This document shows, in pieces, positions 1,929-46,052 of a DNA stretch of 64,000 nt. The stretch lies in IMG/VR virus record IMGVR_UViG_3300032240_001991, positions 124,001 through 188,000 of that record. One strand, written 5' to 3'. The position numbers and the translations under genes are program-made. Numbering within the stretch: position 1 is the first letter of the stretch; every line of letters starts with the position of its first letter. The notes beneath the pieces are model-generated. The model worked only from the letters and a program-made list of their open reading frames with translations, was not told where the DNA came from and made no database searches.

Positions 1929-1974
1929 GTGCAGGGTAGACCAGCACTATTTTTAACAATTAAGGAGTAGATCC
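1928..1974 (+). promoter_or_regulatory. twin GUAGA-loop hairpin leader, copy 2
   Basis: AGTGC-A-GG-GTAGA-CC-A-GCACT (compensatory change relative to copy 1), then GGA-GTAGA-TCC over the SD. Confidence 0.75.
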
Positions 1975-1976
1975 AA

Positions 1977-26534: not shown

Positions 26535-26666
26535 TATCTACCTACAAAATGTTTTTGAATATTTATAAGTTAGCATACTAAGCAGTTTTAAAATTGGAGA
26601 CTGTTAATTTTTTTCTTGCATTATATACGCATATAAATATATAATAGCTATTTAAAGAGAGGCAAC

Positions 26667-29698: not shown

Positions 29699-29700
29699 GT

Positions 29701-30837
29701 TTACTCCAAGAACTGTGTGGTAGGATTGATATTCTTTAATATGTCATTCTTAATTTCATTATTAAAAACACCACACCGTAAAATAACAATTGGGGATTCG
29801 TCATTAGATAGAATCTTAGGATCAGCTACAACTAGATCTGTTCCATACAATCTCTTACCTTGTTTACTCTTATTATTATCTAAAAGACACTCAATGCGAG
29901 ATCTATTCAATCCAAAAGATAAAAGGAACTGACTAAAAATATGAGCTCCAAACAAATATACTTTTTTTTCAGATTTATCTATCTGCTTATTAATCTCTTC
30001 AATTAAATCTAAGTGATGCCTGATGTAGGAGTCAAATAGGTCTTTTATTTCGCTATAAACATTTTTAAATTCTTGTAATTCTATGCCTCGACTAACTCTT
30101 TTAAACGCATAGAAAATACTATGTCCTTTGTCATAGCATTCTTTTTCTACAAGATCAAACCCGCAGCTAGTCATGCACCATTCAACAAATTCTGGCGTGC
30201 ATAGATAAGTATGTTCAAAATGTAAAATATGAGTAAACTTATTATATAGATGATCCTTTGCATCAGGAACTGAAAAACATACCATTGCATCATTAGGAAG
30301 TTCGTGCAATTTTTTAGCAAATTCGAGAGGATCGTAAATGTGTTCGTAAACATGACTATGTACAACAGAATCAATGCCTACAGGATAAACTGTAGAACTA
30401 TCAAAATAGCCTTGCTGTACCTTGGCTTGCAAATCTGGAATAGGAGTAGGATTTGGTTCTAAAATTGTCCAATTTACCTCTGGTACAATCTCGTTGTATA
30501 GTTTACTCAATATACCTGTAGCACCGCCAATTTCAAACACATTTTTTAGATTAAACTTTGAAAGAAATGCAGCAAACGATCTATGATGATTTAGCCAGCT
30601 TCCGCCAGTGGTTCCAGCAGAATGATCTGACTGATAAACAATGTCTAGAGGTAAAACTGGATTCACTTGCAACATTCCGCTACTTTTACTAATGTAAATG
30701 TTTAGATCGCTAACTAGGTCTAAAGAAGTATCTTGATCCGTACATCCCATAAAGACTGGAAAATTCTTAAATGAATATAGTAATTCTAGATCGTTATTAC
30801 CTAATACAATATCTTTATTTCTTTGAATAATGTTCAT
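29701..30837 (-). CDS. SAM methyltransferase resembling sugar C-methyltransferases
   Basis: FEIGGATG, SHVYEH, FEH, C-terminal FGA...DNNKSKQGK. Confidence 0.75.
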   Translation of the reverse strand: MNIIQRNKDIVLGNNDLELLYSFKNFPVFMGCTDQDTSLDLVSDLNIYISKSSGMLQVNPVLPLDIVYQSDHSAGTTGGSWLNHHRSFAAFLSKFNLKNVFEIGGATGILSKLYNEIVPEVNWTILEPNPTPIPDLQAKVQQGYFDSSTVYPVGIDSVVHSHVYEHIYDPLEFAKKLHELPNDAMVCFSVPDAKDHLYNKFTHILHFEHTYLCTPEFVEWCMTSCGFDLVEKECYDKGHSIFYAFKRVSRGIELQEFKNVYSEIKDLFDSYIRHHLDLIEEINKQIDKSEKKVYLFGAHIFSQFLLSFGLNRSRIECLLDNNKSKQGKRLYGTDLVVADPKILSNDESPIVILRCGVFNNEIKNDILKNINPTTQFLE

Positions 30838-30838
30838 T

Positions 30839-32419
30839 TTATTTTGTACCTAATTTAAATTGTAACTGTGATAATGCGATTAGAAATTTATCAAATGGAG
30901 CTTCATGTAATGGACTCATATTGAGATAAATTATAGGAACTAATAACTTAACTTTACTCCAACTTAATCCCTGAGCTATTACCCATTCCTTAAGAATTTC
31001 TTCATATAGGTGATAGTTGTCAACATGCGGTATGTTGATTTCAGCACGGTTATCTTTCTCAATATATTCTAAGTCGTTATCTTTAACCTTTCTATAATTT
31101 AAAATTATTCCGCCTAACATCTTAGCCAGATCGTAATAAATGTCACCATAGATTTTACCAGCAAAGTCTGTCCTCCAGTCTATTGCTGTGAATTTCTTTT
31201 GATTAGGGTCAAAGATTGTATTATCAAAATGAAGATCGCCGTGAATGAATCTCCATTCGTTAGTGGTACATAGCCAGTCCCAGTCAATACTGTCTAAGTA
31301 ACTGTTGATACTTTCTACTTCAACTCCGTTAACACTCTTGCACTCGCTCCAATCAGCATACTTTACTCTGAATTGATCAAGACGTTCGTATGTCTTATTT
31401 TTATAAAATTTTCTACATGTATCAATATTATCAAATGGAACGGAAACTGGAGCATTAACCCATAAATTAGATTCGCACCAGCTTAACATTTCTTTAAATA
31501 ATTCCGGAGTTGCTTGATTATATACAATATCACCTAGAGAATAATCATGCACTAGAAAATTACCTACCGCCTTAATATTACTAGGCATGCAAGACGGATT
31601 TGCTTCTGCCCGTTGCACTCGGCTAATAACATTATCTTTATTTGTAAAATACTTAATAATTTTATTATTGTCGTGATAAAATAATTCGTCAGGTTTTACA
31701 AAGCTATTTTCTACAACCTGAGAATTTAAAGTATACCACTTCTCGTAAGTTCCAAAATCTAGCCACTTACGAACAGTATATGCTTTGAGGTCCATCCCGC
31801 TGAACCCTTGGTAATTTTCTTTAGCATCTCTTTCTTCTAAATAATTTAAAAAGCTGTCGTCTTTATTGTACATTAATCCAATAAATGCATCAACGGCTGT
31901 ATCACTAGTTTTTTTATTATGTAGAGAAACGATGTCGTTACCATCTCTTTCTACCCAGTCGTAATCTTTTGCAATTACGCTGTCAACTGGATACACTCCT
32001 ATCCAGTTATGATCCGTATGATTTTGCCAATTGAATTCAAATAATGTATCGCATGCAACTAATACAAACCTACCTTTTATATGTTCAGTACAATATCGTA
32101 CTGTTGTAGCAGGACCCGTATTACTTTCTGAATAGTTTGGAATATCTACAAAAACAATTTGTTTATCATCATGCACAGAACTTACATAGTCTTTAACCTG
32201 CTGCCCCATATGACCGCATGCAATTACAAACTTTGTTGAGTTTTTAGGAAATTTATCTATAATATGACTAATTAGAGGTTTATCTTTATAAGGTATTAAA
32301 GACTTGTTTACCATTCTAGTAAACTGTCCCATTCTTCTACCGTATCCTGCGGCCAAAATCAAAACTGTTAAATTACTTGTGCTCACTGTCAATTCTGCCA
32401 TGTTGTCTATTTTTGTCAT
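30839..32419 (-). CDS. nucleotidyltransferase fused to an aminoglycoside/choline kinase-like domain
   Basis: ILAAGYGRRM; HGDLHFDN, IDWR, YYDLAK; start codon uncertain. Confidence 0.8.
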   Translation of the reverse strand: MTKIDNMAELTVSTSNLTVLILAAGYGRRMGQFTRMVNKSLIPYKDKPLISHIIDKFPKNSTKFVIACGHMGQQVKDYVSSVHDDKQIVFVDIPNYSESNTGPATTVRYCTEHIKGRFVLVACDTLFEFNWQNHTDHNWIGVYPVDSVIAKDYDWVERDGNDIVSLHNKKTSDTAVDAFIGLMYNKDDSFLNYLEERDAKENYQGFSGMDLKAYTVRKWLDFGTYEKWYTLNSQVVENSFVKPDELFYHDNNKIIKYFTNKDNVISRVQRAEANPSCMPSNIKAVGNFLVHDYSLGDIVYNQATPELFKEMLSWCESNLWVNAPVSVPFDNIDTCRKFYKNKTYERLDQFRVKYADWSECKSVNGVEVESINSYLDSIDWDWLCTTNEWRFIHGDLHFDNTIFDPNQKKFTAIDWRTDFAGKIYGDIYYDLAKMLGGIILNYRKVKDNDLEYIEKDNRAEINIPHVDNYHLYEEILKEWVIAQGLSWSKVKLLVPIIYLNMSPLHEAPFDKFLIALSQLQFKLGTK

Positions 32420-32840
32420 CTTGCAATCTTATTACATCGTCTAGATGACATGTGCTTGCTTCTACATATAATAAATCTGTAGTAGCAACCATTCTATGTA
32501 CTGTACCGGGAGGTGTATCAAATATAACACCTGGCGTAAGTTCAATTACTGTAAGATTGTTTATTATATAATCAATTTCTTCAACGGCGTATCCATTTGA
32601 TAGATATTTTTCGCAATCAAAGAAATCTTTATACGTTAATACTACACCTGTACCAGATAATATCATGATACTTTCGCTTTTAAATTGATGCACTTGTAGA
32701 CTAGTTCTATTTCCTTGTTTTAATAACAATTGCTTCAGAACAAAAGGATAAACGTCGTCACCAGGCTGTATCCATTTTTCCCATCCCCAGGGTTTTAATA
32801 CAACTTTTACTTCTTCAGGGGATTTCAACTTCATTGTCAT
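32373..32840 (-). CDS. mannose-6-phosphate isomerase-like cupin
   Basis: KPWG.E, RTSLQVH..KSE, HRM, DDVIRLQD. Confidence 0.8.
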   Translation of the reverse strand: MTMKLKSPEEVKVVLKPWGWEKWIQPGDDVYPFVLKQLLLKQGNRTSLQVHQFKSESIMILSGTGVVLTYKDFFDCEKYLSNGYAVEEIDYIINNLTVIELTPGVIFDTPPGTVHRMVATTDLLYVEASTCHLDDVIRLQDDKNRQHGRIDSEHK

Positions 32841-33597
32841 TAACGTACCTTTCTCTATGTAAGACGTAATTCTTAACCTGTCCCTGTCTTATAGCATCCC
32901 AAAGATGGTTATAACTTTCCATTTGCTCCATGTCTTTAATATGATTAGCATCATCGGGTCTTGGTTTTAGATATTGATATATACAATTTGGGTTCATTTT
33001 AATGTTGCAATTTGGAACTACTCGACGCGACCATTCAGCATCGTCTTCCATGCCCCACAGTATTTTTTCACTTATAGGATATTTCAACATAATATCTTTT
33101 TTTGCTATCCAATAGTTGCCTTGTAAAATCATATGCTTAACAAAACAATCAATATCATAAGGAATCATTAATGCGTATGGCAAACCAGGCCAAGATAGTA
33201 GTCTCCAGCCGTCACCCCTAGCACCGTTAAATAAAAGGCACTGGTGGTTACAAATATCCCAATCAAACCCAAACTTAAGAAGCTCTTCGTACCATCCCGG
33301 TAAAATTTTAATGTAATCGTGCATGGGTATTACTAAGTCATATTTCGCAGCTTGTATACCTAAATTCTTTTTACGAGTAGTCCATTTTCCTGGTTTTCCG
33401 TGTACCATTATGTGTGTCCATAGTGTCTCGTCAAACGGTATATGGCTAGTATTTTTACGGGTTACAGTAGTTGACTCGCCGCCAACTAATATAACTTCAT
33501 ATTCAGGCATATTTTCTGCTTCAATGCTATCAATAACCTGGTTAACCATTTCGTCGTTAGTTCCACCAGTTACAATAATAAAACTTATTCCAGGCAA
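32815..33597 (-). CDS. GT2-like glycosyltransferase
   Basis: YEVILVGG, KKNLG..AAKYD, HDY, WGMEDD. Confidence 0.7.
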   Translation of the reverse strand: MPGISFIIVTGGTNDEMVNQVIDSIEAENMPEYEVILVGGESTTVTRKNTSHIPFDETLWTHIMVHGKPGKWTTRKKNLGIQAAKYDLVIPMHDYIKILPGWYEELLKFGFDWDICNHQCLLFNGARGDGWRLLSWPGLPYALMIPYDIDCFVKHMILQGNYWIAKKDIMLKYPISEKILWGMEDDAEWSRRVVPNCNIKMNPNCIYQYLKPRPDDANHIKDMEQMESYNHLWDAIRQGQVKNYVLHRERYVNDNEVEIP

Positions 33598-34451
33598 GAT
33601 AATAGCTCCTTAGCAGATTTTGTAGCACCTTCTATTATATATTTTTTATATTTTTCTTGATTTTCTAAAATAGTTTTTGGAAAATAGTCATCTAACATTA
33701 CTGGTTCAAATCTATGGTTGGGCCCAATAGATGTTTTATTTTCTGCTATTAATGATTCAACATCAATAGAGTCTGCTTTCCACTCTAACTCACTATGTGC
33801 AAAACTTCTATATTTGTTTGCAACATCTTTAGAATCACCTAAGCTACTAAAATGCCAGCCGGCATGTTGCAGACACTTTTCTTGGTTGTCGCTGTATACT
33901 GTTGGTCGATTGGCCCAACATGTTCCGTATATTTCTCTAATATAAGAAAAGTTAGGAAAAGACACTGCTCTTTCTACGGTCATTCCTTGCGTCTGCACTT
34001 GATAGATTAAAGGAGTAGTCCACATATAATTAAATCGATAATTAAACATGGGCATACGGAATCCCCAAAAATTATGTTCAAAATCGTTTTTTAATTCTTC
34101 AATTGCACTAGGACGTATAAATTCATCTATATCCCCAAGAAGTATTATATCTTGATTATCAACATTTGTTAATCCGTTAACAAGGCAATTTCTCTGATGT
34201 CGTTCGTTGTGCCAGCAATTACCGTCAATAACTCCTGGCATATCTTCTACCTTGACATGTATGATTTTATCAAGCCATGGCTTAAAACGTTCAAGATTAT
34301 CTAAAAAAATAAATTCTTTAGGTCTTCCACTATGGGTAGTATTTGCTTCTGATATAACAAAATAATCTACTAGATTCCAAAGTTCCCTTAATCTAATTTC
34401 TAAAAGATCAAGTTCATTGTAGAAACTAAAACAATCATAAACTTTATTCAT
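33585..34451 (-). CDS. GT17-family (GnT-III-like) glycosyltransferase
   Basis: YDCFSFYNELDLLEIR, E..QR, DIDE, GWHFS. Confidence 0.85.
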   Translation of the reverse strand: MNKVYDCFSFYNELDLLEIRLRELWNLVDYFVISEANTTHSGRPKEFIFLDNLERFKPWLDKIIHVKVEDMPGVIDGNCWHNERHQRNCLVNGLTNVDNQDIILLGDIDEFIRPSAIEELKNDFEHNFWGFRMPMFNYRFNYMWTTPLIYQVQTQGMTVERAVSFPNFSYIREIYGTCWANRPTVYSDNQEKCLQHAGWHFSSLGDSKDVANKYRSFAHSELEWKADSIDVESLIAENKTSIGPNHRFEPVMLDDYFPKTILENQEKYKKYIIEGATKSAKELLSCLE

Positions 34452-34454
34452 GAG

Positions 34455-35396
34455 TTACCATATAAAATTGTTTTTATAATACTTAACGATCTGTTTAAGT
34501 TCTGCGTCAAAATTTGCCTTTGGAGTCCAACCTAATTTCTTTAACTTAGTATCATCAACAGCATATCGAACATCTTGTCCAGGACGCTTTACAGAAAGAT
34601 CTAAATGATGATCTCCTTTTAATCCCATAAATTTCATAATTTTTTGGGCCACTACAATATTTTGATCTTCATAGTTTCCGCTAATGTTATAAATTTCATT
34701 TTTAACACCTGCCTTAATAATAGCAATTATAGCATTAGCGGTGTCGCTGGCATGTAACCAAGTACGACGAGGGGTACCCAAATCATGCAAAGGAGCCGGC
34801 TTATCTAAGCTCAAGCACTTAATTGTATGTGGGATAAACTTTTCAGTATATTGTCCAATTCCGTAGTTATTAGTTGGACGTACAATTACATAAGGAATTT
34901 TATAAGTTCTTGCCCAAGCAGTTACCAGCATATCTGCTGCGGCCTTTGTTGCTGAATAAGGATTACTAGGCTTAAGAAGGTCTTGCTCAGTATGTGCCCC
35001 TTCAGACAAATCACCGTAGACTTCGTCTGTAGAGAAATGTAACAAGGTAGGCATGTAAAACTTGTACTTGTTTTGAATTAATTTTAACAAATGATGTACA
35101 CCGTCGATATTGCTACGAACAAACACATCACTGGACGCAATTGAATTATCAACGTGTGTTTCTGCTGCGGTGTTTATGATGTAATCACATTCGTATAATT
35201 CAACAAGATCGTTAATATCCTTATGTTCAAAGGTAAAAGTTGGATATTGTTTTAAATGATCTAATAAATTCCAGTTGGCCGCATACGTTCCTTTGTCAAT
35301 GCCTCGAACGTACCATCCGTTATCTAAACAGGCTTTAGTTACATGGTATCCCATGAACCCTAAACAGCCAGTAACATAAACAACTTTTTTACTCAT
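34455..35396 (-). CDS. NDP-glucose 4,6-dehydratase (RmlB/RfbB-like)
   Basis: TGCLGFMG, AAETHVDNS, STDEVYG, NPYSATK, RPGQD.RY. Confidence 0.9.
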   Translation of the reverse strand: MSKKVVYVTGCLGFMGYHVTKACLDNGWYVRGIDKGTYAANWNLLDHLKQYPTFTFEHKDINDLVELYECDYIINTAAETHVDNSIASSDVFVRSNIDGVHHLLKLIQNKYKFYMPTLLHFSTDEVYGDLSEGAHTEQDLLKPSNPYSATKAAADMLVTAWARTYKIPYVIVRPTNNYGIGQYTEKFIPHTIKCLSLDKPAPLHDLGTPRRTWLHASDTANAIIAIIKAGVKNEIYNISGNYEDQNIVVAQKIMKFMGLKGDHHLDLSVKRPGQDVRYAVDDTKLKKLGWTPKANFDAELKQIVKYYKNNFIW

Positions 35397-36205
35397 TTAT
35401 AATCCTTAAGACCTTTGTCTAAACCTTCTAAATCTAAATTTAATGTAGCTAAAAGACTTCCATCACCTGTATAATCTAACCCTCTGTTATTACTAATAAA
35501 AATTTGAGTTTTTAGGTTATGGTATCTTTTAAATCTTTCTAGTATATCTACAAGGTCGTGTTTATCTTGATAAACACAATTCATGTCCTTGTATCTGGGT
35601 TGATTATTTATATAGTACTTTAATACCTGAAAGAAATCTCTGCAACTAACATAGTCAAGGTATTTGTTTTCAACTTCTATAGTTTCTTGAAGTTGACATC
35701 TTTTTAGTAATCTAAAATCTGGCTCATCAGGCGTAAAACAACCAAATAATCTGAGATTGTAAAAATTATCTTTTTCTAAAACAAATCTGCTGATGACATT
35801 TTTACTAAACGCATAACTTCTTTCTGGGTACCTGTTTAAAATGTCTGACTCGCGAGCCATGCGAACATGTCTTGATGAATCAAATTCTGCTCCTGACGCA
35901 ACGTTAATAAATTTACCAAACAGATGACTGTTATTATAAAAATTTAAAAAAACTGTAAGGTTATTTCTCACGTCATCGTAAATGATATCATTTACTGTAA
36001 GCTTGCCGCCGGCTGTAGCACAGTTAATTACAACCTCAGGATTTATTGTAGTTAACCATGCCACAACCGCAGCGTTATCTCTAAGATCTAATTCTTTTCG
36101 TATAACTGGATATACATCATACCCTTCTTCTATTAAAGAGTTGGTAATATATTTTCCTAATGTTCCGGTTGACCCTAATACTGCTACTTTTTTCATATTA
36201 TGCAA
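35393..36205 (-). CDS. NAD-dependent epimerase/reductase (SDR)
   Basis: GSTGTLG, SGAEF, YAFSK, RLFG. Confidence 0.8.
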   Translation of the reverse strand: MHNMKKVAVLGSTGTLGKYITNSLIEEGYDVYPVIRKELDLRDNAAVVAWLTTINPEVVINCATAGGKLTVNDIIYDDVRNNLTVFLNFYNNSHLFGKFINVASGAEFDSSRHVRMARESDILNRYPERSYAFSKNVISRFVLEKDNFYNLRLFGCFTPDEPDFRLLKRCQLQETIEVENKYLDYVSCRDFFQVLKYYINNQPRYKDMNCVYQDKHDLVDILERFKRYHNLKTQIFISNNRGLDYTGDGSLLATLNLDLEGLDKGLKDYK

Positions 36206-37232
36206 AGTGTGATTGTTCGCCGCTCTGTCTCTGAGATAGTTCTTGTGCTACTTCAATTATAAGGCTTTCTTGTCCTGCAACTGCTTTTCTTTTACCCAAC
36301 TCAAAGAAAATATCTCTTGGATCAACTCCATAGTCTTTAGCAGCCGCAGAGACTGGTTTTGAAAAACCTGAAAATACTCCGCTTAATCCACTAACTACAG
36401 ATACCGGTGAAATATAAGGTGCAACCGGATTGAATTCTTTTTCTACAAGATCTGCAAGGTCAAGTAACTTGTATAAGTCAATTCCTGTATTCCATCCTAG
36501 TCGTTCAAATACAGCAACCATTACTTCAAGTTGAGTATTTCCTGCACCAGCTCCAAATCCTCTTACTGTTCCGTCAATCATTGTTGCACCCGCACGTACC
36601 GCAGCTATAGAATTAGCTACAGCTAGACCTAAGTTATTATGTCCGTGGAACCCTACACTAATCTTTAAATTGTTAACCAATGCAGAAATACGCTCTGTAA
36701 CATCTTCGGGAATATAGTTTCCCGAAGAATCCATAATGATTACAGTTTCTGCTCCGTAAGATTCCATTTTTTGTGCTTCTTCTATTAACTGAGTTACCGG
36801 AGCCATATGACTCATCATTAACACTCCGTATACAGTTCTATTTGCTTTACGGATATATTCAATGTGACGTTTAGTAATGTCTGCTTCAGTTACATGACTA
36901 GCAACACGGAATACATCAACACCTAAGTCAATCGCTCTGATTAAATCTTGTTTAATAGTACAAAACCCTGGAATTAAATGAATACCTAATTTAGAATTTT
37001 TAAGATTTTCTCGACTCGTAGTTAATATTTCTTCGTCACTGATTGCTGCTTGCCCAACTAACAAGGAAGATGCGCCTAGCCCGTTTCCGTGTCCTACTTC
37101 AACGATAGGAATTCCTGCAGCATCTGCTGCTTGACAATAAACGGCAAAATTTTCTTTAGTTAGCTGATGTCGAACTGCGTGATTACCATCTCTTAATGTT
37201 GGGTCACTGATTAAAATATTTGTCATGCTCAC
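36198..37232 (-). CDS. dmpG: 4-hydroxy-2-oxovalerate aldolase
   Basis: DPTLRDGNH, EVGHGNGLG, GFHGHNNLG, GAGAGN, GQE. Confidence 0.92.
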   Translation of the reverse strand: MSMTNILISDPTLRDGNHAVRHQLTKENFAVYCQAADAAGIPIVEVGHGNGLGASSLLVGQAAISDEEILTTSRENLKNSKLGIHLIPGFCTIKQDLIRAIDLGVDVFRVASHVTEADITKRHIEYIRKANRTVYGVLMMSHMAPVTQLIEEAQKMESYGAETVIIMDSSGNYIPEDVTERISALVNNLKISVGFHGHNNLGLAVANSIAAVRAGATMIDGTVRGFGAGAGNTQLEVMVAVFERLGWNTGIDLYKLLDLADLVEKEFNPVAPYISPVSVVSGLSGVFSGFSKPVSAAAKDYGVDPRDIFFELGKRKAVAGQESLIIEVAQELSQRQSGEQSHFA

Positions 37233-38101
37233 TCCTTATTGGTTTGCAATTTTTCTAGAACTGCAATAGCAGCACAATTGATTATATCTAAGTTTCCTGC
37301 ATATTGAGGAAGATAGTCGCCCGCTCCTAAAACTTTAACAGTTAGCATGACTACTCCTTCTCTAATCACCGGAGGAACTACAATCTGATATCCAGGCACA
37401 TACTTACGTACACTTTCTACCATGTCTTCAACAGAGTTCTTAATTTCTGTTAAATTAGGATTCTTAATCTTAGCGTATATAGTAGTGATCATATCAATAG
37501 GAGGAGTTGCAGGATTTAGAATTAAAATTGCTTTAGCTGCTTTAGCCCCTGAAAAAGATTTAATAGCGGACTGTGTCGTTTCAACATACTCATCGAGATT
37601 TTGACGAGTAGCAGGTCCTGCACTTAAAGATGCAATGTTTGAAGAGACTTCAATATAGTCGATATCTTTATGAACTCTACTAAGAGCAAACGCAATTGGA
37701 ATACTGGTCTGCCCTCCACAAGTTATCATATTAATATTTCGAGCTGTTGTGGAAGACCAGTTGTCATTTGAAATTGCAGGTACGCAAAAATTACCAAGTT
37801 TAGCCGGAGTTAGGTCAATAATTGTTTTACCTAAATCTTTACAAATCTGCCAATGATGCGGGTGAGCTTGAGCTGACGTACAATCAACTACTACGTCGAT
37901 AGATTCCGAGTCACTTATAACCGCACCAATTCCTTTATCAGAAATCTTAACCCCTAGTTCTTTAGCCCTACGCATGCCGTTAGAATCAAGTGTTCTTCCG
38001 GCAAATACCGTACAAGTAAGATATTCAGACCTCATTATCTTAATTAAAAGGTCTGTTCCAATGTTACCTGATCCTATGATCGCGATTCGTAACTTGCTCA
38101 T
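37229..38101 (-). CDS. dmpF: acetaldehyde dehydrogenase (acylating)
   Basis: IGSGNIGTDL, DLTPA, NMITCGGQ, SAGPATR, YAGNLDI. Confidence 0.93.
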   Translation of the reverse strand: MSKLRIAIIGSGNIGTDLLIKIMRSEYLTCTVFAGRTLDSNGMRRAKELGVKISDKGIGAVISDSESIDVVVDCTSAQAHPHHWQICKDLGKTIIDLTPAKLGNFCVPAISNDNWSSTTARNINMITCGGQTSIPIAFALSRVHKDIDYIEVSSNIASLSAGPATRQNLDEYVETTQSAIKSFSGAKAAKAILILNPATPPIDMITTIYAKIKNPNLTEIKNSVEDMVESVRKYVPGYQIVVPPVIREGVVMLTVKVLGAGDYLPQYAGNLDIINCAAIAVLEKLQTNKE

Positions 38102-39933
38102 ATAGCATCCTTAGCCTGTCCTTGTGTCCTGCTGTTGACACCGATGACCATTGCCTCTTTCAACACATCTCTAGGAATAAGAGGTGAAAGGTCTTCTAAT
38201 GGAGACGAAACTAACGATCCATCATCTCGCATCTGCATGCCTAGCTTTGGAGAGAACAGTTGCTTTGGATGCATGAATACTTCGCAAATAACTGGTCCTG
38301 TTGCATTTTGAACCTCAGGAAGAAACTTATCGCAATCTTCCCAAGTTCTAATTTGATACGAAGGAATATCAAACGCAGCAGCTATCTTACTAAAGTCTGG
38401 GCATGATACTCCGTTTGATTTGTCAACACCTACTCGATTGTTTTTAAACAATGCATTTTGAGTATGCTTGATCATTAAGTATCCATCGTTGTTAAAAATA
38501 AACAACTTGATAGGAAGTTTATGATGTACCATAGTTTGCAATTCCTGCAGATTCATCATCATGCCGCCATCGCAGTTTAAACACATGACTTCACCGTTAC
38601 CTACTGCAACGCTTGCTCCAATTGCACCAGGAAGTCCGTAACCCATCTCTCCTAGTCCAGTTGACGTCATTAGACGCTGGCCAGTCTTTAATGAAAGTAC
38701 CTGATGTCCTGATAGCAGTGCAGTTCCCATGTCTGTCACCACAATTTGATCAGGCTTAAAGTATTCGTTGAGCTTCTTCATAAACGGATAAGAGTTAATG
38801 AATCCGTCCTTATCTTCGTGTTCTGCATCAACCCAAGGAAACTTTTTAAGGTACCCGCTGCAAGTATTAATCCATTCAAGATTTAATGGTAACTCAACAT
38901 CTTTTAGCTTCTCAGTTAATTGATCAATAAACACGCCAGCATCGCAAACAACTGCTTCGTTAATACGAGGTTTAAGTTTAGTAGCTTCGACCGGATCAAT
39001 GTCTACAACGTCAATTACCGCTTCTCGAGCAAGTTCAGTTAAGTTATAACCAATTTGAGGAATTGCTAGTCTTGTACCGATAGCAAGAACATAATCACTG
39101 TTTTGCAATACAAAATTAGCACACCGTTGTCCGTATACACCTGCACGCCCGTAAACTAACGGATGATCAGAATCAATAATGTCTATACCTGCCCATGAAA
39201 CAAGCGCAGGATATCCTAAACGATTTAGAAATCCAGGAAGCTTATAATGCGCCTCTGCTAGTCTAATACCATGCCCTAACCAAAGTACAGGACGCTTAGA
39301 TTTCATTAATGATTCAACAACTGAATCAACCTGCGTCTTTAACTGTTCAGTAACATAGTCTTTGTTTGGAGGAGGAACATAATGGCTGCAATTCTTTTCT
39401 TCAACAAAGCTGCTTTGAATGTCCATTGGAATTTCAATCCAAACTGGGCCGGGTCGTTGATCTAAAGTAATATGTGCAGCCTTTTCAAGTTCATAAACTG
39501 TCTTTTCTGGACTAATAACGCGATTAGCATATTTGGTCATCTTCTTGACCATATCAACAGAATCAAATCCCTGAACTCCCCACATCCTATTTGGACTGTA
39601 GGGCAATGTATGCTTAGAATTCTCGTTACCTGCAATTACGATACCAGGAATAGAATCTGCCCATGCAGACAATACACCAGTTACACCGTTACTAGAGCCT
39701 CCTCCAGTTGTCATCAACGCCGCGGCCAATTTTCCACTAGTTCGATAATATGTTTGCATAGCCATTGCTGCGGCCTGTTCATGATGCACACAAATAATCT
39801 CTGTGTATCCTCGCTTGGCTATAGCTTCAAACAAATGAACATTACCTGCACCAATGATGCCAAAGGCGTGTTTGATTTCTAACCGTTCTAGTGTTTCTGC
39901 TACTAGATCGGCAACTTTAACTTTTTCTGTCAT
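38098..39933 (-). CDS. thiamine-diphosphate-dependent carboligase (acetolactate synthase/YerE-like)
   Basis: HHEQAA, RPGPVW, MGYGLPGA, DGG..MNLQEL, NNDGY. Confidence 0.88.
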   Translation of the reverse strand: MTEKVKVADLVAETLERLEIKHAFGIIGAGNVHLFEAIAKRGYTEIICVHHEQAAAMAMQTYYRTSGKLAAALMTTGGGSSNGVTGVLSAWADSIPGIVIAGNENSKHTLPYSPNRMWGVQGFDSVDMVKKMTKYANRVISPEKTVYELEKAAHITLDQRPGPVWIEIPMDIQSSFVEEKNCSHYVPPPNKDYVTEQLKTQVDSVVESLMKSKRPVLWLGHGIRLAEAHYKLPGFLNRLGYPALVSWAGIDIIDSDHPLVYGRAGVYGQRCANFVLQNSDYVLAIGTRLAIPQIGYNLTELAREAVIDVVDIDPVEATKLKPRINEAVVCDAGVFIDQLTEKLKDVELPLNLEWINTCSGYLKKFPWVDAEHEDKDGFINSYPFMKKLNEYFKPDQIVVTDMGTALLSGHQVLSLKTGQRLMTSTGLGEMGYGLPGAIGASVAVGNGEVMCLNCDGGMMMNLQELQTMVHHKLPIKLFIFNNDGYLMIKHTQNALFKNNRVGVDKSNGVSCPDFSKIAAAFDIPSYQIRTWEDCDKFLPEVQNATGPVICEVFMHPKQLFSPKLGMQMRDDGSLVSSPLEDLSPLIPRDVLKEAMVIGVNSRTQGQAKDAI

Positions 39934-39937
39934 GTGT

Positions 39938-41257
39938 TTATCCTATAAATTTTGACATAAATTCGTCAACTTTTTCACCAATATAAGAAATTTGTTCTGG
40001 GGTGATTACTGGACTAGTTCCATGGAAAAAAGTATTTTTCATCACAAATGTAGACACTGGGTAATCCAGCTTGGCTTTGAGAGGATCCATTAAGTGACTA
40101 TATGCTGGTTGTAACATTATGTTACCTGCAAAATATGGCCGTGTCTGAATTAAATTATCTTCAAGAAAATTAACCAACTGGCTTCGGTTGAACGGAGCAT
40201 CCTTACGTATAGTAAGCGGAAAGGCAAACCAGCTGACATCCGCTTTATCTCGCGGGCGCGGCAGATGGAAAAATTCTTCGTACTTACTATAAATGTTGAA
40301 TAACAAATTGTAGTTACGCTGCCTCAGTTGATGTATAGTTGCTAACTTATCTATCTGAGCTAATCCAATCGCTCCTTGCAACTCAATTGGCTTAAGATTG
40401 TACCCAATTTCGTCATAAACATACTTGTGATCAAAGATTTCACCAGGCATAGTTGGAATCCATTCCTTAAACCGTTCCTTACATGTTCCGCATTTTAACT
40501 TATTGGCCTTTGGGCCAGCGCAATAACATCCACGACCCCATTCACGGAAACTGCGAAGAATGTCTTCTGTGTTCTTATCGTTGCATGCTACAAATCCACC
40601 TTCGCCCATAGTCATATGATGAGCAGGATAAAAACTACAAGATGCCATTTCTCCAAAACTTCCTAGCGGTTTACCGTCGTAGGTTGTTCCTAGTCCGTCA
40701 CAGCAGTCTTCAAGAAGCACAAGGTTATACTTCTTAACTAGGTCCATGACCTGATCCATGTTAGGACAATTTGCTAGCACATGGGCAAATGTAATGACCT
40801 TAACATCATGCTGCTTAATTAGTTCCTCTGCACGGGTAAGATCTAAGTTTAAAGTGTCAATTTCTATATCTACAAATACTGGCTCAAATCCTACCTGTAA
40901 CATAGGATTAAGTGTTGTAGGGAATCCTGCAATAGGTGTTAGTACCTTTGTACCTTTTGGAAAATGGTGCCCTCGTTTGCTGGTCAATGCGCTCATCATA
41001 ATTAGATTTGCGCTGCTTCCGCTATTAGTAAGAACTCCGTATTCTTTTCCAAACTGTTCTGGAAATTTCTTCTCAAATCTAAGACACCGGTCTCCCATCA
41101 CGAGCCATCCGTTGAGCAATACTTCAACAGCGTCTACGTATTCGTCTGCGCTAAAATAAGGACCTGCATAATTTACAAAGTCTTTGCCCGCTGTCCATTG
41201 CTGTGCAGCTTGCTTGTTTTCAATATATTGTTTAATTTGGTTTAAGATTTCTTTCAT
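39938..41257 (-). CDS. rfbH: NDP-4-keto-6-deoxyglucose 3-dehydrase E1 (DdhC/RfbH)
   Basis: NSGSSAN; SFYPAHHMTMGEGG with His in place of the PLP Lys; Cys cluster GCYC...CGTC; DHKY; start MKEIL. Confidence 0.9.
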   Translation of the reverse strand: MKEILNQIKQYIENKQAAQQWTAGKDFVNYAGPYFSADEYVDAVEVLLNGWLVMGDRCLRFEKKFPEQFGKEYGVLTNSGSSANLIMMSALTSKRGHHFPKGTKVLTPIAGFPTTLNPMLQVGFEPVFVDIEIDTLNLDLTRAEELIKQHDVKVITFAHVLANCPNMDQVMDLVKKYNLVLLEDCCDGLGTTYDGKPLGSFGEMASCSFYPAHHMTMGEGGFVACNDKNTEDILRSFREWGRGCYCAGPKANKLKCGTCKERFKEWIPTMPGEIFDHKYVYDEIGYNLKPIELQGAIGLAQIDKLATIHQLRQRNYNLLFNIYSKYEEFFHLPRPRDKADVSWFAFPLTIRKDAPFNRSQLVNFLEDNLIQTRPYFAGNIMLQPAYSHLMDPLKAKLDYPVSTFVMKNTFFHGTSPVITPEQISYIGEKVDEFMSKFIG

Positions 41258-41913
41258 TAGAGTACTATCTGTTGCATGTAATGTTGGGCCAAGTGTATGC
41301 GATGTGGCAAAGAAGTGCCCGGCCAATGTATTAATAGATCGCCCGGTTTCCAATTTCCATCAACGCCTAATTTATCGAGCTGCTTTTCTGGTTCAGCACA
41401 TTCCTGATAAAGTTGATAATTATAGGCATTAATTTCTCGTTGAGGAACAATTTTAATAAGGGCTTTATTATCTTCTAAAGTGTCAATAATAACTTGCTGT
41501 TCCATCCACCCATGATCTTTGTACTCTGGTTGTTTACTCATGATCATTTTAATGTAGTACTTTCCTTCAGGACTATTACGGATCAAGAAACTATCTGCAT
41601 TGATTCCATTACAATCAGTTGAAATAACAAAGTGATAATTGTTATCAGCTTTGGTTTCTAAACCAACTGTCATGTTCGTAACAAGCGTGTCACACCCGGT
41701 CCACCAAAACCAGTCTATCTCTGGATAGGCTTCCATCATATCGTTGATAAACCAAATTTTTTCAAAACCTAAACCTACACCGTAAAATTGATCTGTCTTA
41801 CAGGCATATCCGTACCCTCTTCGTTCGGCATAAAGTACTTTATTTCTATTCCATGTAAGATCAGCAAGGGGCTGAAAGTTGGGTGTATGTAAGCTAACTA
41901 TTGCAAAATCCAT
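41257..41913 (-). CDS. GT34/MNN10-like glycosyltransferase
   Basis: K..YA...GY, WFWWTGCD, GINA, EQ, GDLLIHWPG. Confidence 0.75.
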   Translation of the reverse strand: MDFAIVSLHTPNFQPLADLTWNRNKVLYAERRGYGYACKTDQFYGVGLGFEKIWFINDMMEAYPEIDWFWWTGCDTLVTNMTVGLETKADNNYHFVISTDCNGINADSFLIRNSPEGKYYIKMIMSKQPEYKDHGWMEQQVIIDTLEDNKALIKIVPQREINAYNYQLYQECAEPEKQLDKLGVDGNWKPGDLLIHWPGTSLPHRIHLAQHYMQQIVL

Positions 41914-42070
41914 ATTGTATCCTGAGTAAAATTATAGTTATATTTAATTGCTACTCTTGTTTCAAGAATAATTTATGATCTTAATACTACACTCAATCTT
42001 GTCAAATTGCAAGTCTTTGAGATCTTAAAGTTCTACGATCATAAATTTAGTTTACTACATAACCTAGGTC

Positions 42071-42078
42071 TATAAATA
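42071..42078 (+). promoter_or_regulatory. T4-type late promoter box TATAAATA (example of a recurring element)
   Basis: exact T4 late consensus 5 nt before ATG 42084; TAAATA recurs before many genes. Confidence 0.7.
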
Positions 42079-42083
42079 CCTCT

Positions 42084-45323: not shown

Positions 45324-46052
45324 ATGTCAAAACCTAATATTCTTATACCTATGGCAGGATTAGGATCCAGATTCCTGATGAAGGGATTTAGTATCCCAAA
45401 ACCCTTGATTGATATCAATGGTACTCCTATGATTATTAAAGCCATTAGGAGCCTTGGGATAGAAAATGCAACTTACCTATTTGTAATATCAAAAAATGCT
45501 TATACTGAACATATTAAAAAAGAAATATCGGATTCAGTAAATTCTCAATTTATAGAAATTGACTATTTGACAGAAGGCCCTGCTTGTTCAGCTCTTCTTT
45601 TTGAATCACAGATTGATAATGACCAAGAACTTATTGTTGCTAATTGCGATCAGATTATGGAATGGAACGCAGAATCATTTTTGCTTAATGTTCGGCAATA
45701 TGACGGTGCAGTTGTTACATATCATGAAACTACCGATAAAAATAGCTATGCTAGAATTGATGATAGAGGATATGTAGTTAGTATTAAAGAAAAACAGGTA
45801 ATAAGCAACATATCATTAAATGGTGTCCACTATTGGAAAAAAGGTCGCTATTTCGTAGAAAGTGTTAAAAAAATGATTGAGATGGACGATCGAGCACCCA
45901 ACGGCGAATTTTACGTAGGCCCTACTTACAACTACATGATACAAGAAGGTAAAAAGGTAGGAATTTATCATATCCCAAATCAGATGCATCATGCCGTGGG
46001 TGTTCCCGAAGATCTTCAAAAGTATATTAATCACGAGAGAAATAAAAAATGA
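45324..46052 (+). CDS. sugar nucleotidyltransferase-like protein
   Basis: PMAGLGSRF, PKPLI, NCDQ, NGEFYV. Confidence 0.8.
   Translation: MSKPNILIPMAGLGSRFLMKGFSIPKPLIDINGTPMIIKAIRSLGIENATYLFVISKNAYTEHIKKEISDSVNSQFIEIDYLTEGPACSALLFESQIDNDQELIVANCDQIMEWNAESFLLNVRQYDGAVVTYHETTDKNSYARIDDRGYVVSIKEKQVISNISLNGVHYWKKGRYFVESVKKMIEMDDRAPNGEFYVGPTYNYMIQEGKKVGIYHIPNQMHHAVGVPEDLQKYINHERNKK

What the first reader, a model, noticed from the sequence alone, without database searches (positions are those of the whole stretch)
34455..41257. Phage operon for a C4-branched 3,6-dideoxy higher sugar, apparently using DmpF/DmpG in reverse
Seen: contiguous DdhC/RfbH (E1 3-dehydrase), TPP carboligase, acylating acetaldehyde dehydrogenase, 4-hydroxy-2-oxovalerate aldolase, SDR reductase and 4,6-dehydratase, flanked by glycosyltransferases. 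Known: yersiniose A is made by TPP-dependent YerE adding a pyruvate-derived C2 unit to CDP-4-keto-3,6-dideoxyglucose, followed by reduction. Inference: DmpF/DmpG supply 4-hydroxy-2-oxovalerate as donor, giving a four-carbon branch and a C10 erwiniose-like sugar for virion or host-surface glycosylation. No E3 reductase (DdhD) is visible in the window.
Basis: partly seen in the sequence, partly recalled or inferred. Interest (0 to 1): 0.72.

Follow-up and report, generated by a model that had tools for sequence, protein, structure and literature searches.

The report
Phage operon for erwiniose-like branched sugar
A jumbo T4-type phage carries a complete-looking gene set for a rare ten-carbon branched deoxysugar. 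The chemistry was already worked out for a plant-pathogen's cell-surface sugar (erwiniose); what is new is that many uncultured phages carry their own version of it.

Summary
Seven co-directional, overlapping genes (41913 to 34455, minus strand) encode a GT34-like glycosyltransferase, an E1/RfbH 3-dehydrase, a YerE-like ThDP carboligase, DmpF, DmpG, a short SDR and an RmlB-like 4,6-dehydratase.

In that pathway the aldolase and aldehyde dehydrogenase make 4-hydroxy-2-oxopentanoate as the ThDP donor.

- **Carboligase:** the window enzyme is 68% identical to JanthE (PDB 8RPH) and shares its odd CDG motif.
- **Linkage:** the carboligase, DmpF and DmpG lie within 5 kb of each other in 76 of 80 bacterial and 67 of 70 viral related loci.
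- **Aldolase signature:** all 139 linked aldolases carry His/Phe(His) where catabolic BphI has Leu87/Tyr290. These are the two residues that set C4 stereochemistry.
- **Host genome:** a Rak2/GAP32-like jumbo phage with a T4-type capsid protein.
- **Viral differences:** an RmlB-type dehydratase, its own SDR family and no E3 reductase, although the E1 keeps its Fe-S cysteines. The cassette is also mosaic: a viral-lineage E1 joined to a carboligase of proteobacterial type.
- **Open points:** the glycan's target and the sugar's nucleotide carrier are unknown.

This is a new viral variant of a known pathway.

The parts
41257..41913 (-). GT34-like glycosyltransferase (218 aa). First gene of the minus-strand operon and candidate transferase for the branched sugar.
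   Evidence: Pfam PF05637, 86.6 bits against a cut-off of 23. Its stop overlaps the E1 start as TAATG. Homologues sit next to the cassette in L081 and L082 and in 17 viral loci in all.
39938..41257 (-). E1-type NDP-4-keto-6-deoxyhexose 3-dehydrase (RfbH/DdhC-like, 439 aa), dependent on PMP and a [2Fe-2S] cluster.
   Evidence: NF011936 scores 446.9 against 423. It scores 341 bits to Yersinia E1 (3BCX), with His220 and Cys193/251/253/261 conserved. It falls in a viral-only E1 clade with 100/99 support.
38098..39933 (-). YerE/JanthE-like ThDP-dependent carboligase (611 aa), the branching enzyme.
   Evidence: 956 bits and about 68% identity over the full length to JanthE (8RPH/8RPI/8RPJ), including the CDG ThDP motif (PMC12188165). 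It is nested in a proteobacterial clade.
37229..38101 (-). Acylating acetaldehyde dehydrogenase (DmpF/BphJ/ErwJ-like, 290 aa).
   Evidence: TIGR03215 scores 376 against 282. The catalytic Cys in ITCGGQ and the GSGNIGTDL motif are conserved against 7Z3S and 1NVM_B. An ATGA overlap links it to the carboligase stop.
36198..37226 (-). Class II pyruvate aldolase (DmpG/BphI/ErwI-like, 342 aa from ATG 37226; the open frame reaches GTG 37232).
   Evidence: TIGR03217 scores 386 against 286, with a DmpG_comm domain. Arg17, Asp18, His21, His200 and His202 are conserved against 1NVM. His85 and Phe287 replace DmpG Leu88/Tyr291 (BphI Leu87/Tyr290). AAGGAG lies upstream of the ATG.
35393..36196 (-). Short SDR (267 aa from ATG 36196), candidate side-chain ketoreductase playing the ErwF/YerF role.
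   Evidence: Pfam Epimerase and RmlD_sub_bind hits. GSTGTLG, SGA and YxxSK motifs are conserved across a viral-only family of 54 members that usually follows DmpG. The best PDB matches are GDP-fucose synthase and RmlD.
34455..35396 (-). RmlB-type NDP-glucose 4,6-dehydratase (313 aa).
   Evidence: TIGR01181 E 1.5e-86 (290 bits, below the 365 cut-off), against only 58 bits to the CDP-glucose dehydratase model. All the best PDB matches are dTDP-glucose 4,6-dehydratases. It is 58-70% identical to viral homologues but only 20-36% to the best SDR-type match in bacterial loci.
33585..34451 (-). GT17-like glycosyltransferase immediately downstream.
   Evidence: PF04724, 88.9 bits. The same position is occupied in L081.
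45324..46052 (+). RmlA-like sugar-1-phosphate nucleotidyltransferase (242 aa), the best candidate for supplying the NDP-hexose.
   Evidence: Weak matches to rmlA_long and 4EVW. It is 76% identical to a gene lying beside the cassette in the nearest relative, L081.
25155..26534 (-). Fusion of a beta-phosphoglucomutase-like HAD domain with a nucleotidyltransferase (459 aa), an alternative supplier of NDP-glucose.
   Evidence: Pfam HAD_2 plus NTP_transferase; TIGR01990/TIGR02009 and rmlA_long.
27284..41913 (-). Fifteen-gene polycistronic unit that contains the cassette, with no gap over 4 nt. Downstream genes are GT17, a weak GT2-like gene, a cupin, an NT+kinase fusion, a TylC3-like C-methyltransferase, an unknown gene, a KdsC-like phosphatase and a GatZ-like gene.
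   Evidence: ORF map; Pfam and NCBIfam.
41914..42083 (.). Divergent intergenic region between the two glycan operons.
   Evidence: A sigma-70-like TTGACA-16-TAAGAT on the minus strand at 42005-41978 and TATAAATA at 42071-42078 on the plus strand. These are consensus matches only.

Best explanation
The operon is a phage-borne version of the erwiniose-type pathway for an acyl-branched 3,6-dideoxyhexose. The steps below are marked as shown by sequence or as inferred.

1. A phage RmlA-like nucleotidyltransferase makes an NDP-glucose. From the enzyme types this is probably dTDP- or UDP-linked, not CDP-linked (inferred).
2. The RmlB-type dehydratase converts it to NDP-4-keto-6-deoxyglucose (family shown, substrate inferred).
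3. The E1 3-dehydrase removes the 3-OH. It has the PMP-site His and all four [2Fe-2S] cysteines (shown). Its electrons must come from a host ferredoxin or flavodoxin reductase system, because no E3 is encoded (absence shown, source inferred).
4. DmpF reduces acetyl-CoA to acetaldehyde, and DmpG condenses it with pyruvate to 4-hydroxy-2-oxopentanoate. The product is probably the (4R) isomer, because the two stereo-controlling residues are His and Phe instead of Leu and Tyr (residues shown, stereochemistry inferred).
5. The JanthE-like ThDP enzyme decarboxylates that acid and adds the C4 unit to C-4 of the keto sugar (inferred from synteny and from the activities of ErwE and JanthE).
6. The short SDR reduces the side-chain ketone (inferred).
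7. The adjacent GT34- or GT17-like transferases install the C10 sugar in a glycan.

The whole 29.5-kb island encodes only soluble proteins, and the contig has no Wzx/Wzy/WecA-like membrane protein. The glycan is therefore most likely built in the cytoplasm on a soluble acceptor such as virion proteins. That last point has low confidence.
For: - **Published precedent:** the erwiniose cluster has ErwE, ErwF, ErwJ and ErwI in a row. ErwE uses 4-hydroxy-2-oxopentanoate and rejects pyruvate (PMC9306805).
- **Carboligase:** 68% identical to JanthE, which accepts 4-hydroxy-2-oxovalerate, with the CDG motif conserved.
- **Linkage:** carboligase, DmpF and DmpG lie within 5 kb in 76/80 bacterial and 67/70 viral loci across at least 10 phyla.
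- **Aldolase residues:** all 139 linked aldolases keep the catalytic Arg, Asp, His and His-x-His residues. All carry His at BphI-87, and Phe (122) or His (17) at BphI-290, never Leu/Tyr. In BphI, Y290F relaxes the stereospecificity and L87N/Y290F inverts it to (4R) (PMC3962088). Erwiniose needs the (R)-acid.
- **E1 signature:** conserved in the window and in 27/27 long viral homologues.
- **Reductase:** the SDR has an intact Rossmann fold and Ser-Tyr-Lys motifs, and a conserved position after DmpG.
- **Operon structure:** overlapping stops and starts indicate translational coupling.
- **Phage identity:** Gp23 capsid protein, 68-71% identical to jumbo phages of the GAP32/CBB group.
- **Soluble proteins only:**
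Against: - Nothing here is biochemical. JanthE also accepts pyruvate and other 2-oxo acids, so the donor rests on linkage.
- No E3 or Fer2/FNR-type protein exists in this contig or in five other cassette-bearing viral genomes, four of them 95-100% complete. E1 turnover therefore depends on an unidentified host partner.
- The dehydratase is RmlB-type, whereas characterised E1 enzymes use CDP-sugars. The nucleotide is unknown.
- The SDR is not orthologous to the bacterial reductases.
- Direct comparison with ErwE/F/I/J could not be made.
- BphI-type aldolases and ErwE also handle propionaldehyde-derived acids, so the branch could be C5.
- The acceptor of the glycan is unknown.
Confidence: 0.65

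Rival explanations
1. Yersiniose-type C2 branch. The ThDP enzyme uses pyruvate directly, giving a 4-C-acetyl group that is then reduced to 1-hydroxyethyl. DmpF and DmpG play an accessory role, for example balancing pyruvate, acetaldehyde and acetyl-CoA.
For: JanthE, the closest characterised enzyme at 68% identity, accepts pyruvate. YerE chemistry is the founding example.
Against: DmpF and DmpG are almost never absent next to this carboligase clade (143/150 loci). In Pseudomonas loci L007 and L008 a separate 570-aa YerE-like paralogue sits beside the JanthE-like gene, suggesting distinct donors. The aldolase has a dedicated non-catabolic active-site signature.
Confidence: 0.12
2. Same scheme but a different aldehyde. 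DmpF reduces propionyl-CoA or another short acyl-CoA, giving 4-hydroxy-2-oxohexanoate and a C5 (or other) branch, that is, a sugar that is not erwiniose.
For: ErwE converted the hexanoate donor better than the pentanoate donor, 76% against 49%. In BphI, replacing the residues that line the aldehyde pocket shifts specificity among acetaldehyde, propionaldehyde and longer aldehydes.
Against: The position equivalent to BphI Leu89, which limits chain length, stays bulky (Ile87, or Ile/Met in all 139 homologues). Acetyl-CoA is the abundant substrate.
Confidence: 0.1
3. Without E3 the E1 homologue does not complete the 3-deoxygenation. The carboligase then branches NDP-4-keto-6-deoxyhexose, or E1 acts as a ColD-like dehydratase or transaminase, giving a 6-deoxy rather than a 3,6-dideoxy branched sugar.
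For: No E3 in six viral genomes. A second viral group carries a short, Cys-less, ColD-like homologue instead.
Against: The window E1 and 27/27 long viral homologues retain all four Fe-S cysteines and His220, which argues for selection on redox function. Only 8/80 bacterial cassettes have E3 within 10 kb, so an in-cluster E3 is commonly dispensable. From memory, SpnQ works with general ferredoxin or flavodoxin reductases.
Confidence: 0.1
4. Rival on role. The sugar is fed into the host's own lipid-linked O-antigen or capsule assembly to change the cell surface (superinfection exclusion), or it decorates phage DNA. In neither case is it placed on virion proteins.
For: Erwiniose-type sugars are O-antigen components in bacteria. 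Phage glycosyltransferases are known to modify host serotype and DNA (reviewed in PMC12619734).
Against: No membrane glycosyltransferase, flippase or polymerase is found in the contig. There is no Tet/JBP match, and the single ThyA-family hit scores like an ordinary thymidylate synthase at 344 bits. None of this is decisive.
Confidence: 0.3
5. DmpF and DmpG are a catabolic auxiliary metabolic gene pair (the end of the meta-cleavage pathway), unrelated to the sugar genes.
For: Both score above the equivalog cut-offs for the catabolic enzymes.
Against: No hydratase, decarboxylase or dioxygenase neighbours are present. The pair is embedded in a sugar operon by overlapping codons. The stereo-controlling residues differ from DmpG and BphI in all 139 homologues.
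Confidence: 0.02

Closest known systems
Erwiniose biosynthetic gene cluster of Pectobacterium atrosepticum SCRI1043 (ErwE/ErwF/ErwJ/ErwI; Steitz et al., Angew Chem 2022, PMC9306805)
   Same: The enzyme set and logic are the same: a YerE-like ThDP carboligase, an NAD(P)H reductase, a BphJ-like acetaldehyde dehydrogenase and a BphI-like pyruvate aldolase, next to genes for a 4-keto-3,6-dideoxyhexose and a glycosyltransferase. The aldolase runs in the synthetic direction to make the ThDP donor.
   Different: - It sits in a phage, not a bacterial O-antigen locus.
- The gene order is E1-carboligase-DmpF-DmpG-SDR-dehydratase. Bacterial loci such as L001 (Duganella) instead have a ~1-kb gene between the carboligase and DmpF, matching the consecutive ErwE-F-J-I accessions.
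- The 4,6-dehydratase is RmlB-type, not DdhB-type.
- There is no DdhA-type cytidylyltransferase and no E3.
- The reductase belongs to a viral-only SDR family.
JanthE from Janthinobacterium sp. HH01 (PDB 8RPH/8RPI/8RPJ; PMC12188165)
   Same: About 68% identity over 600 residues and the same unusual CDG ThDP-binding motif. In the tree, the window enzyme falls in a clade of Oxalobacteraceae and other Pseudomonadota sequences, the group JanthE's source organism belongs to.
   Different: JanthE's physiological substrates are unreported. Here, and in 143 related loci, the gene is linked to DmpF and DmpG, which predicts the donor. The window copy is viral.
Yersiniose A pathway (YerE/YerF with DdhA-D, Yersinia pseudotuberculosis)
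   Same: E1-dependent 3-deoxygenation followed by ThDP-dependent C-4 branching and side-chain reduction.
   Different: YerE uses pyruvate (C2 branch) and has no linked aldolase or dehydrogenase. That pathway is CDP-based and has a dedicated E3.
DmpFG / BphIJ / HsaFG catabolic aldolase-dehydrogenase complexes
   Same: The fold, metal ligands, catalytic Cys and communication domain are the same, consistent with a channelling heterocomplex.
   Different: The direction of use is synthetic. Leu87/Tyr290 (BphI numbering) are replaced by His and Phe. There is no meta-cleavage context.
E1-containing glycan clusters in Synechococcus phages (S-B05, S-H68, RN05-S) and megaphage LR756502.1
   Same: These are phage-encoded E1-like dehydrases (about 41% identity) with GT17-like transferases nearby.
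   Different: No ThDP carboligase or DmpG homologue is present in any of the 50,697 GenBank phage records searched.

Membership tests
Erwiniose-type acyl-branched sugar gene cluster (Steitz et al. 2022) | YerE-like ThDP-dependent carboligase in the cluster | tested here: met
   956 bits and 68% identity to JanthE. All three TPP domains are present and it falls below all AHAS cut-offs.
Erwiniose-type acyl-branched sugar gene cluster (Steitz et al. 2022) | BphI/DmpG-type pyruvate aldolase and BphJ/DmpF-type acylating aldehyde dehydrogenase adjacent to the carboligase | tested here: met
   TIGR03217 scores 386 against 286 and TIGR03215 scores 376 against 282. The genes overlap the carboligase gene and each other, and the catalytic residues are intact.
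Erwiniose-type acyl-branched sugar gene cluster (Steitz et al. 2022) | NAD(P)H-dependent side-chain reductase (ErwF/YerF equivalent) | tested here: inconclusive
   An intact SDR follows DmpG. It belongs to a viral-only family and has no detectable orthologue in the 80 bacterial loci. Its substrate is untested.
Erwiniose-type acyl-branched sugar gene cluster (Steitz et al. 2022) | CDP-4-keto-3,6-dideoxyglucose supply genes (DdhA cytidylyltransferase, DdhB CDP-glucose dehydratase, DdhC E1, DdhD E3) | tested here: not met
   Only E1 is present. The dehydratase is RmlB-type (290 bits to the dTDP model against 58 bits to the CDP model). No viral locus has the 257-aa DdhA-type gene found in 61/80 bacterial loci. 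No E3 is present.
Erwiniose-type acyl-branched sugar gene cluster (Steitz et al. 2022) | Carboligase uses 4-hydroxy-2-oxopentanoate as donor on a 4-keto sugar | not testable with these tools
   Needs an enzyme assay. It is inferred from synteny and from ErwE and JanthE data.
Erwiniose-type acyl-branched sugar gene cluster (Steitz et al. 2022) | Orthology to ErwE/ErwF/ErwI/ErwJ (WP_011093010-13) | not tested
E1 (DdhC/RfbH) PMP- and [2Fe-2S]-dependent 3-dehydrase | His in place of the PLP lysine (His220), and the Cys193/251/253/261 cluster ligands | tested here: met
   In the alignment to 3BCX, YPAHH and all four Cys are conserved, with a 5-residue insertion before the last Cys. NF011936 is above its cut-off.
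E1 (DdhC/RfbH) PMP- and [2Fe-2S]-dependent 3-dehydrase | Dedicated E3 (Fer2 + FNR-like) reductase partner | tested here: not met
   PF00175 and PF00111 are absent from the 326-kb contig, and PF00175 is absent from five other cassette-bearing viral genomes. Controls gave matches in 11-12 of 14 genomes.
JanthE/YerE-like ketone-accepting ThDP lyases | CDG in place of the canonical GDG ThDP motif (the JanthE hallmark) | tested here: met
   CLNCDGGMMMNLQEL is identical to 8RPH; the motif is described in PMC12188165 and PMC12247030.
Catabolic DmpFG/BphIJ meta-cleavage module | Leu87/Tyr290 (BphI numbering) pocket giving strict (4S) specificity, and a meta-cleavage operon context | tested here: not met
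   His85 and Phe287 are found here and in all 139 linked homologues (His; Phe or His). The neighbours are sugar enzymes only.
T4-type (Gp23) jumbo myovirus of the Rak2/GAP32-like group | T4-type major capsid protein, closest to that group | tested here: met
   PF07068 E 1.3e-78 at G000:C1:303624-304610. It is 68-71% identical to Vibrio phage 2.275.O, Phosso, XaC1, GAP32 and CBB. There is no NCLDV capsid match (though its controls were silent).

The most novel reading that the evidence does not exclude
Uncultured T4-type phages, this jumbo phage among them, have long kept their own pathway for a C10 branched 3,6-dideoxy sugar: a 64-member viral-only carboligase clade and a viral-only E1 clade.

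- It runs on a non-CDP nucleotide and borrows host electrons for E1.
- It is used in a fully cytoplasmic, membrane-independent assembly line of about 30 genes that glycosylates virion proteins, a bacteriophage counterpart of giant-virus fibril glycosylation.
- The window's lineage later swapped its carboligase-aldolase module for one of proteobacterial type, which hints at a betaproteobacterial host.
Probability: 0.3. Interest if true: 0.7.

Novelty: new variant of a known kind. Interest (0 to 1): 0.5.

Why it matters
Higher-carbon branched sugars such as erwiniose, caryophyllose and yersiniose were known only from bacterial envelopes and antibiotics.

- **Phage glycobiology:** the full erwiniose-type module is widespread in uncultured T4-type phages but absent from about 50,000 GenBank phage records. 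This extends phage glycobiology to very unusual sugars and gives a sequence marker for finding them.
- **JanthE's donor:** the near-universal linkage to DmpF and DmpG predicts the physiological donor of JanthE, which the literature lists as unknown.
- **Aldolase signature:** the invariant His/Phe signature offers a natural template for (4R)-selective pyruvate aldolases, which until now have been obtained only by engineering BphI.
- **E1 redox partner:** the E3-less, RmlB-coupled viral E1 clade raises a testable question about which redox partner and nucleotide these enzymes use.

Tried and rejected
- **Erw proteins:** direct comparison with ErwE/F/I/J was not possible.
- **Giant-virus contigs:** testing whether the GVMAG-labelled contigs are giant viruses failed because those records are not held. 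The NCLDV-capsid search of the own genome was negative, but its controls were silent.
- **Other negative or uninformative searches:**
  - The tail-sheath Pfam search was negative and is uninformative.
  - DNA-level search of the operon against phages found only a 137-bp bacterial-like fragment.
  - The sequencing-run search returned only the probable source metagenome and gave no habitat or RNA data.
- **Literature:** searches found no report linking phages with this aldolase/ThDP module. I could not confirm from the library that PDB 5AHK (second-best hit, 231 bits) is PpYerE; that identification is from memory.
- **Promoters:** the T4 late-promoter consensus TATAAATA is not enriched in the window (5 found against 10 expected), so expression timing cannot be inferred.
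- **Alternative reductase:** relaxed Pfam scans of nine unannotated island ORFs found no alternative reductase for E1.
- **Rejected readings:**
  - The catabolic AMG reading.
  - Aldol extension after acetyl branching, because DmpG-type aldolases need the 2-oxo-acid carboxylate (this step rests on established knowledge).
- **CheckV:** its 36% completeness estimate looks unreliable, because the closest capsid relatives have genomes of 349-469 kb.

Full report
**1. Observation**

The stretch 34455-41913 holds seven minus-strand genes with no intergenic gap over 4 nt. Pfam and NCBIfam give the following identifications:

| Coordinates | Product | Evidence |
|---|---|---|
| 41257-41913 | GT34-like transferase | Pfam PF05637 |
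| 39938-41257 | RfbH/E1 | NF011936, 446.9 bits vs cut-off 423 |
| 38098-39933 | three-domain ThDP enzyme | below every acetolactate-synthase cut-off |
| 37229-38101 | DmpF | TIGR03215, 376 vs 282 |
| 36198-37226 | DmpG | TIGR03217, 386 vs 286; DmpG_comm domain |
| 35393-36196 | short SDR | Pfam Epimerase / RmlD_sub_bind |
| 34455-35396 | RmlB-like 4,6-dehydratase | TIGR01181, 290 bits, E 1.5e-86 |

Reading the junctions refines three start codons:
- E1 starts at ATG 41257, in a TAATG overlap with the GT34 stop.
- DmpG most likely starts at ATG 37226, behind an AAGGAG Shine-Dalgarno sequence.
- The SDR starts at ATG 36196, one base after the DmpG stop.

GT17-like, GT2-like and further GT17-like genes flank the set.

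**2. The genome**

The window is bases 124001-188000 of a 326,658-bp single-contig IMG/VR virus record.
- It encodes a T4-type Gp23 major capsid protein (E 1.3e-78).
- The closest relatives of that protein are 349-469-kb jumbo myoviruses: Vibrio phage 2.275.O at 71%, then Sinorhizobium Phosso, Xanthomonas XaC1, Cronobacter GAP32 and Pectobacterium CBB at 68-70%.
- PHROG matches in the window (NAD-salvage genes and a pelagiphage-type adenylate cyclase) agree with a phage origin.

'Phage' is therefore right. CheckV's 36% completeness estimate is probably too low.

**3. What is already known**

Steitz et al. (Angew Chem 2022, PMC9306805) described the putative erwiniose cluster of Pectobacterium atrosepticum. 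A YerE-like ThDP enzyme (ErwE) and a reductase (ErwF) lie next to a BphJ-like acetaldehyde dehydrogenase (ErwJ) and a BphI-like pyruvate aldolase (ErwI), beside genes for CDP-4-keto-3,6-dideoxyglucose.

They showed that ErwE uses 4-hydroxy-2-oxopentanoate and rejects pyruvate. The mechanism is therefore published. The viral setting is not.

**4. The carboligase**

- The best solved relative is 8RPH/8RPI/8RPJ (956 bits, about 68% identity over 600 residues). PMC12188165 identifies it as JanthE from Janthinobacterium sp. HH01.
- JanthE is a YerE-like enzyme with an unusual CDG ThDP motif. It has a broad donor range that includes pyruvate and 4-hydroxy-2-oxovalerate, and its physiological substrates are unknown.
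- The window protein has the same CLNCDGGMMMNLQEL stretch.

**5. Linkage**

Scans with the carboligase returned 80 bacterial loci (57-70% identity) and 71 IMG/VR viral loci (40-74%). The bacterial loci include Oxalobacteraceae, Pseudomonas, Sphingobacteriaceae, Flavobacterium, Leptospira, Verrucomicrobiota and Armatimonadota.

tblastn of the window's proteins against all of them shows DmpF and DmpG within 5 kb of the carboligase in 76/80 bacterial and 67/70 viral loci. Most exceptions are truncated contigs. This is strong evidence that the three proteins work together, and it predicts JanthE's natural donor.

Three of four cassette-bearing viral genomes tested for Gp23 (160-183 kb, 99-100% complete) are T4-type phages.

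No ThDP-carboligase or DmpG homologue exists in 50,697 GenBank phage records apart from bacterial contaminants. E1- and GT17-like genes do occur in some Synechococcus phages and one megaphage.

**6. The aldolase is a biosynthetic subtype**

Against DmpG (1NVM), the catalytic Arg17, Asp18 and His21 and the metal ligands His200 and His202 are conserved. DmpG Leu88 and Tyr291 (BphI Leu87 and Tyr290) are replaced by His85 and Phe287.

Across 139 cassette-linked homologues, the first position is always His. The second is Phe (122) or His (17), never Tyr.

In BphI these two residues bracket C4 of the substrate:
- Wild-type BphI is strictly (4S)-specific.
- Y290F loses stereocontrol.
- L87N/Y290F inverts specificity to (4R) (PMC3962088).

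Erwiniose needs the (R)-acid. The natural His/Phe pair is therefore consistent with a (4R)-forming synthetic aldolase. This is an inference and has not been measured.

DmpF keeps its catalytic Cys and its NAD motif.

**7. E1 and the missing E3**

- The window E1 aligns with Yersinia E1 (3BCX, 341 bits). His220 and all four cluster cysteines (193, 251, 253, 261) are present, with a five-residue insertion before the last one.
- All 27 long viral homologues share this signature. A second viral group has short, Cys-less, ColD-like proteins instead.
- No Fer2 or FNR-type domain occurs in the 326-kb contig, and no FNR-type domain occurs in five other cassette-bearing viral genomes. The positive controls gave matches.
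- A bona fide E3 (Fer2 + FAD_binding_6 + NAD_binding_1) lies within 10 kb in only 8 of 80 bacterial loci.

An in-cluster E3 is therefore commonly dispensable, and a host reductase is the likely electron source. From memory, SpnQ with general ferredoxin or flavodoxin reductases is a precedent.

**8. How the viral version differs**

- **Dehydratase:** it is RmlB-type. All the best PDB matches are dTDP-glucose dehydratases, and it scores 58 bits to the CDP-glucose dehydratase model against 290 bits to the dTDP model.
- **Nucleotidyltransferase:** bacteria carry a DdhA-like 257-aa nucleotidyltransferase in 61/80 loci, but no viral locus does. Instead, the island holds four RmlA-like nucleotidyltransferase domains. 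One of them (45324-46052) is 76% identical to a gene beside the cassette in the nearest relative, L081.
- **Reductase:** the SDR belongs to a viral-only family of 54 members with intact GxxGxxG, Ser and YxxxK motifs, usually placed right after DmpG.

The nucleotide carrier is thus probably not CDP. This could not be tested here.

**9. Mosaic origin**

In an IQ-TREE analysis of 52 carboligases:
- The window, L081, L082 and L083 form a small clade (98/94 support). It is nested inside a 100/99-supported clade whose other members are all Pseudomonadota: Rhodocyclaceae, Sphaerotilaceae, Burkholderiaceae, Oxalobacteraceae, Pseudomonas and one MAG labelled Sphingomonadaceae.
- The other viral sequences (64 in the full 150-sequence FastTree) form a separate viral-only clade.
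- Forcing all viral sequences together costs 94.5 log-likelihood units (AU p = 4e-7). The group was named after a first tree had been seen, which weakens the test somewhat.

For E1, by contrast, all viral sequences including the window's form one clade apart from bacteria (100/99).

Identities agree with this picture:

| Protein | vs main viral clade | vs bacteria |
|---|---|---|
| Carboligase | 40-48% | 57-70% |
| E1 | 60-64% | about 40% |

 The window's lineage thus combines a viral E1, dehydratase and SDR backbone with a carboligase (and probably DmpF/G) of proteobacterial type. This hints at, but does not show, a betaproteobacterial host.

**10. Context and role**

The cassette sits in a 15-gene polycistronic unit (41913 to 27284), inside a roughly 29.5-kb island (19969-49493). 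The island holds several glycosyltransferases (three GT17-like, one GT34-like, one GT2-like, and weaker GT2- and GT1-like candidates), six SAM methyltransferase-domain proteins, a TylC3-like C-methyltransferase, kinase and phosphatase fusions, a KdsC-like phosphatase and a RuBisCO-like protein.

No real gene of the island has a hydrophobic segment typical of membrane proteins. No ORF in the whole contig has five or more such segments, so there is no Wzx, Wzy or WecA-type partner. There is no Tet/JBP match, and the single ThyA-family hit scores like an ordinary thymidylate synthase.

I therefore favour cytoplasmic glycosylation of a soluble acceptor, most plausibly virion proteins. Hijacking of host lipid-linked assembly, or DNA glycosylation, is not excluded.

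**11. Verdict**

The new elements are:
- the viral setting and its breadth;
- the viral-specific parts (RmlB-type entry, own SDR, no E3);
- the mosaic history;
- the invariant His/Phe aldolase signature;
- the prediction of JanthE's physiological donor.

Nothing here is biochemical. The donor, the nucleotide, the redox partner and the glycan's target all need experiments.

Noticed in passing
window 46049-47242 (+): A RuBisCO-like protein (397 aa). PF00016 E 1.4e-35, and the best NCBIfam matches (type III RuBisCO, OiaX) are far below their cut-offs. Its start overlaps the stop of the RmlA-like nucleotidyltransferase. It has no tblastn match in 50,697 GenBank phage records and none in the 151 related loci. 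It may make an unusual sugar phosphate for the same glycan.
   Followed up: partly
window 27284-32840 (-): The downstream half of the same operon looks like a second sugar pathway. It holds a cupin, a fusion of a nucleotidyltransferase with an APH-like kinase (526 aa), a TylC3-like C-methyltransferase, a 328-aa protein with no family, a KdsC-like phosphatase and a GatZ/KbaZ-like protein.
   Followed up: partly
window 21349-22446, 25155-26534, 30839-32419, 45324-46052: There are four separate sugar-1-phosphate nucleotidyltransferase domains in one island. Three are fused to other domains: a HAD phosphatase, a beta-phosphoglucomutase-like HAD and a kinase. Three of the four are paralogous to each other.
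   Followed up: partly
window 26535-26666 and 42071-42078: The T4 late-promoter consensus TATAAATA occurs in both orientations in the divergent intergenic region at 26.5 kb, about 26-28 nt before each start codon. It also occurs 5 nt before the ATG at 42084. The motif is not enriched in the window overall.
   Followed up: partly
L090-L097, L100-L110, L112, L147, L148 (viral contigs): A second viral form of the cassette, some on contigs labelled GVMAG (giant-virus bins). DmpG is on the opposite strand, and a short Cys-less ColD-like dehydratase replaces E1. In 17 of these aldolases His replaces Phe at the BphI-290 position. Whether these are giant viruses could not be checked because the records are not held.
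   Followed up: partly
L007 8208-9920 and 9989-11821; L008 likewise (Pseudomonas spp.): Two ThDP carboligase paralogues lie in tandem: a 570-aa YerE-like gene and a 610-aa JanthE-like gene. They follow ddhD-ddhA-ddhB-ddhC and precede DmpF/DmpG. This suggests that two different branched sugars are made from one precursor.
   Followed up: no
window 57812-59854 (+): A 680-aa protein with four hydrophobic segments, about 39% identical to the adenylate/guanylate cyclase-domain proteins of Methylophilales phage Melnitz and pelagiphage HTVC008M (phrog_35576, E 1e-237).
   Followed up: no
window 873-3350 (+): An NAD-salvage pair, NadR/NatV-like cytidylyltransferase-Nudix plus nicotinamide phosphoribosyltransferase, as found in KVP40-type and other large phages.
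   Followed up: no
G000 whole record: CheckV-style completeness is given as 36% for a 326.7-kb contig, yet the closest capsid relatives have genomes of 349-469 kb. The estimate is probably misleading. The contig has no terminal repeats and so may still be slightly incomplete.
   Followed up: no
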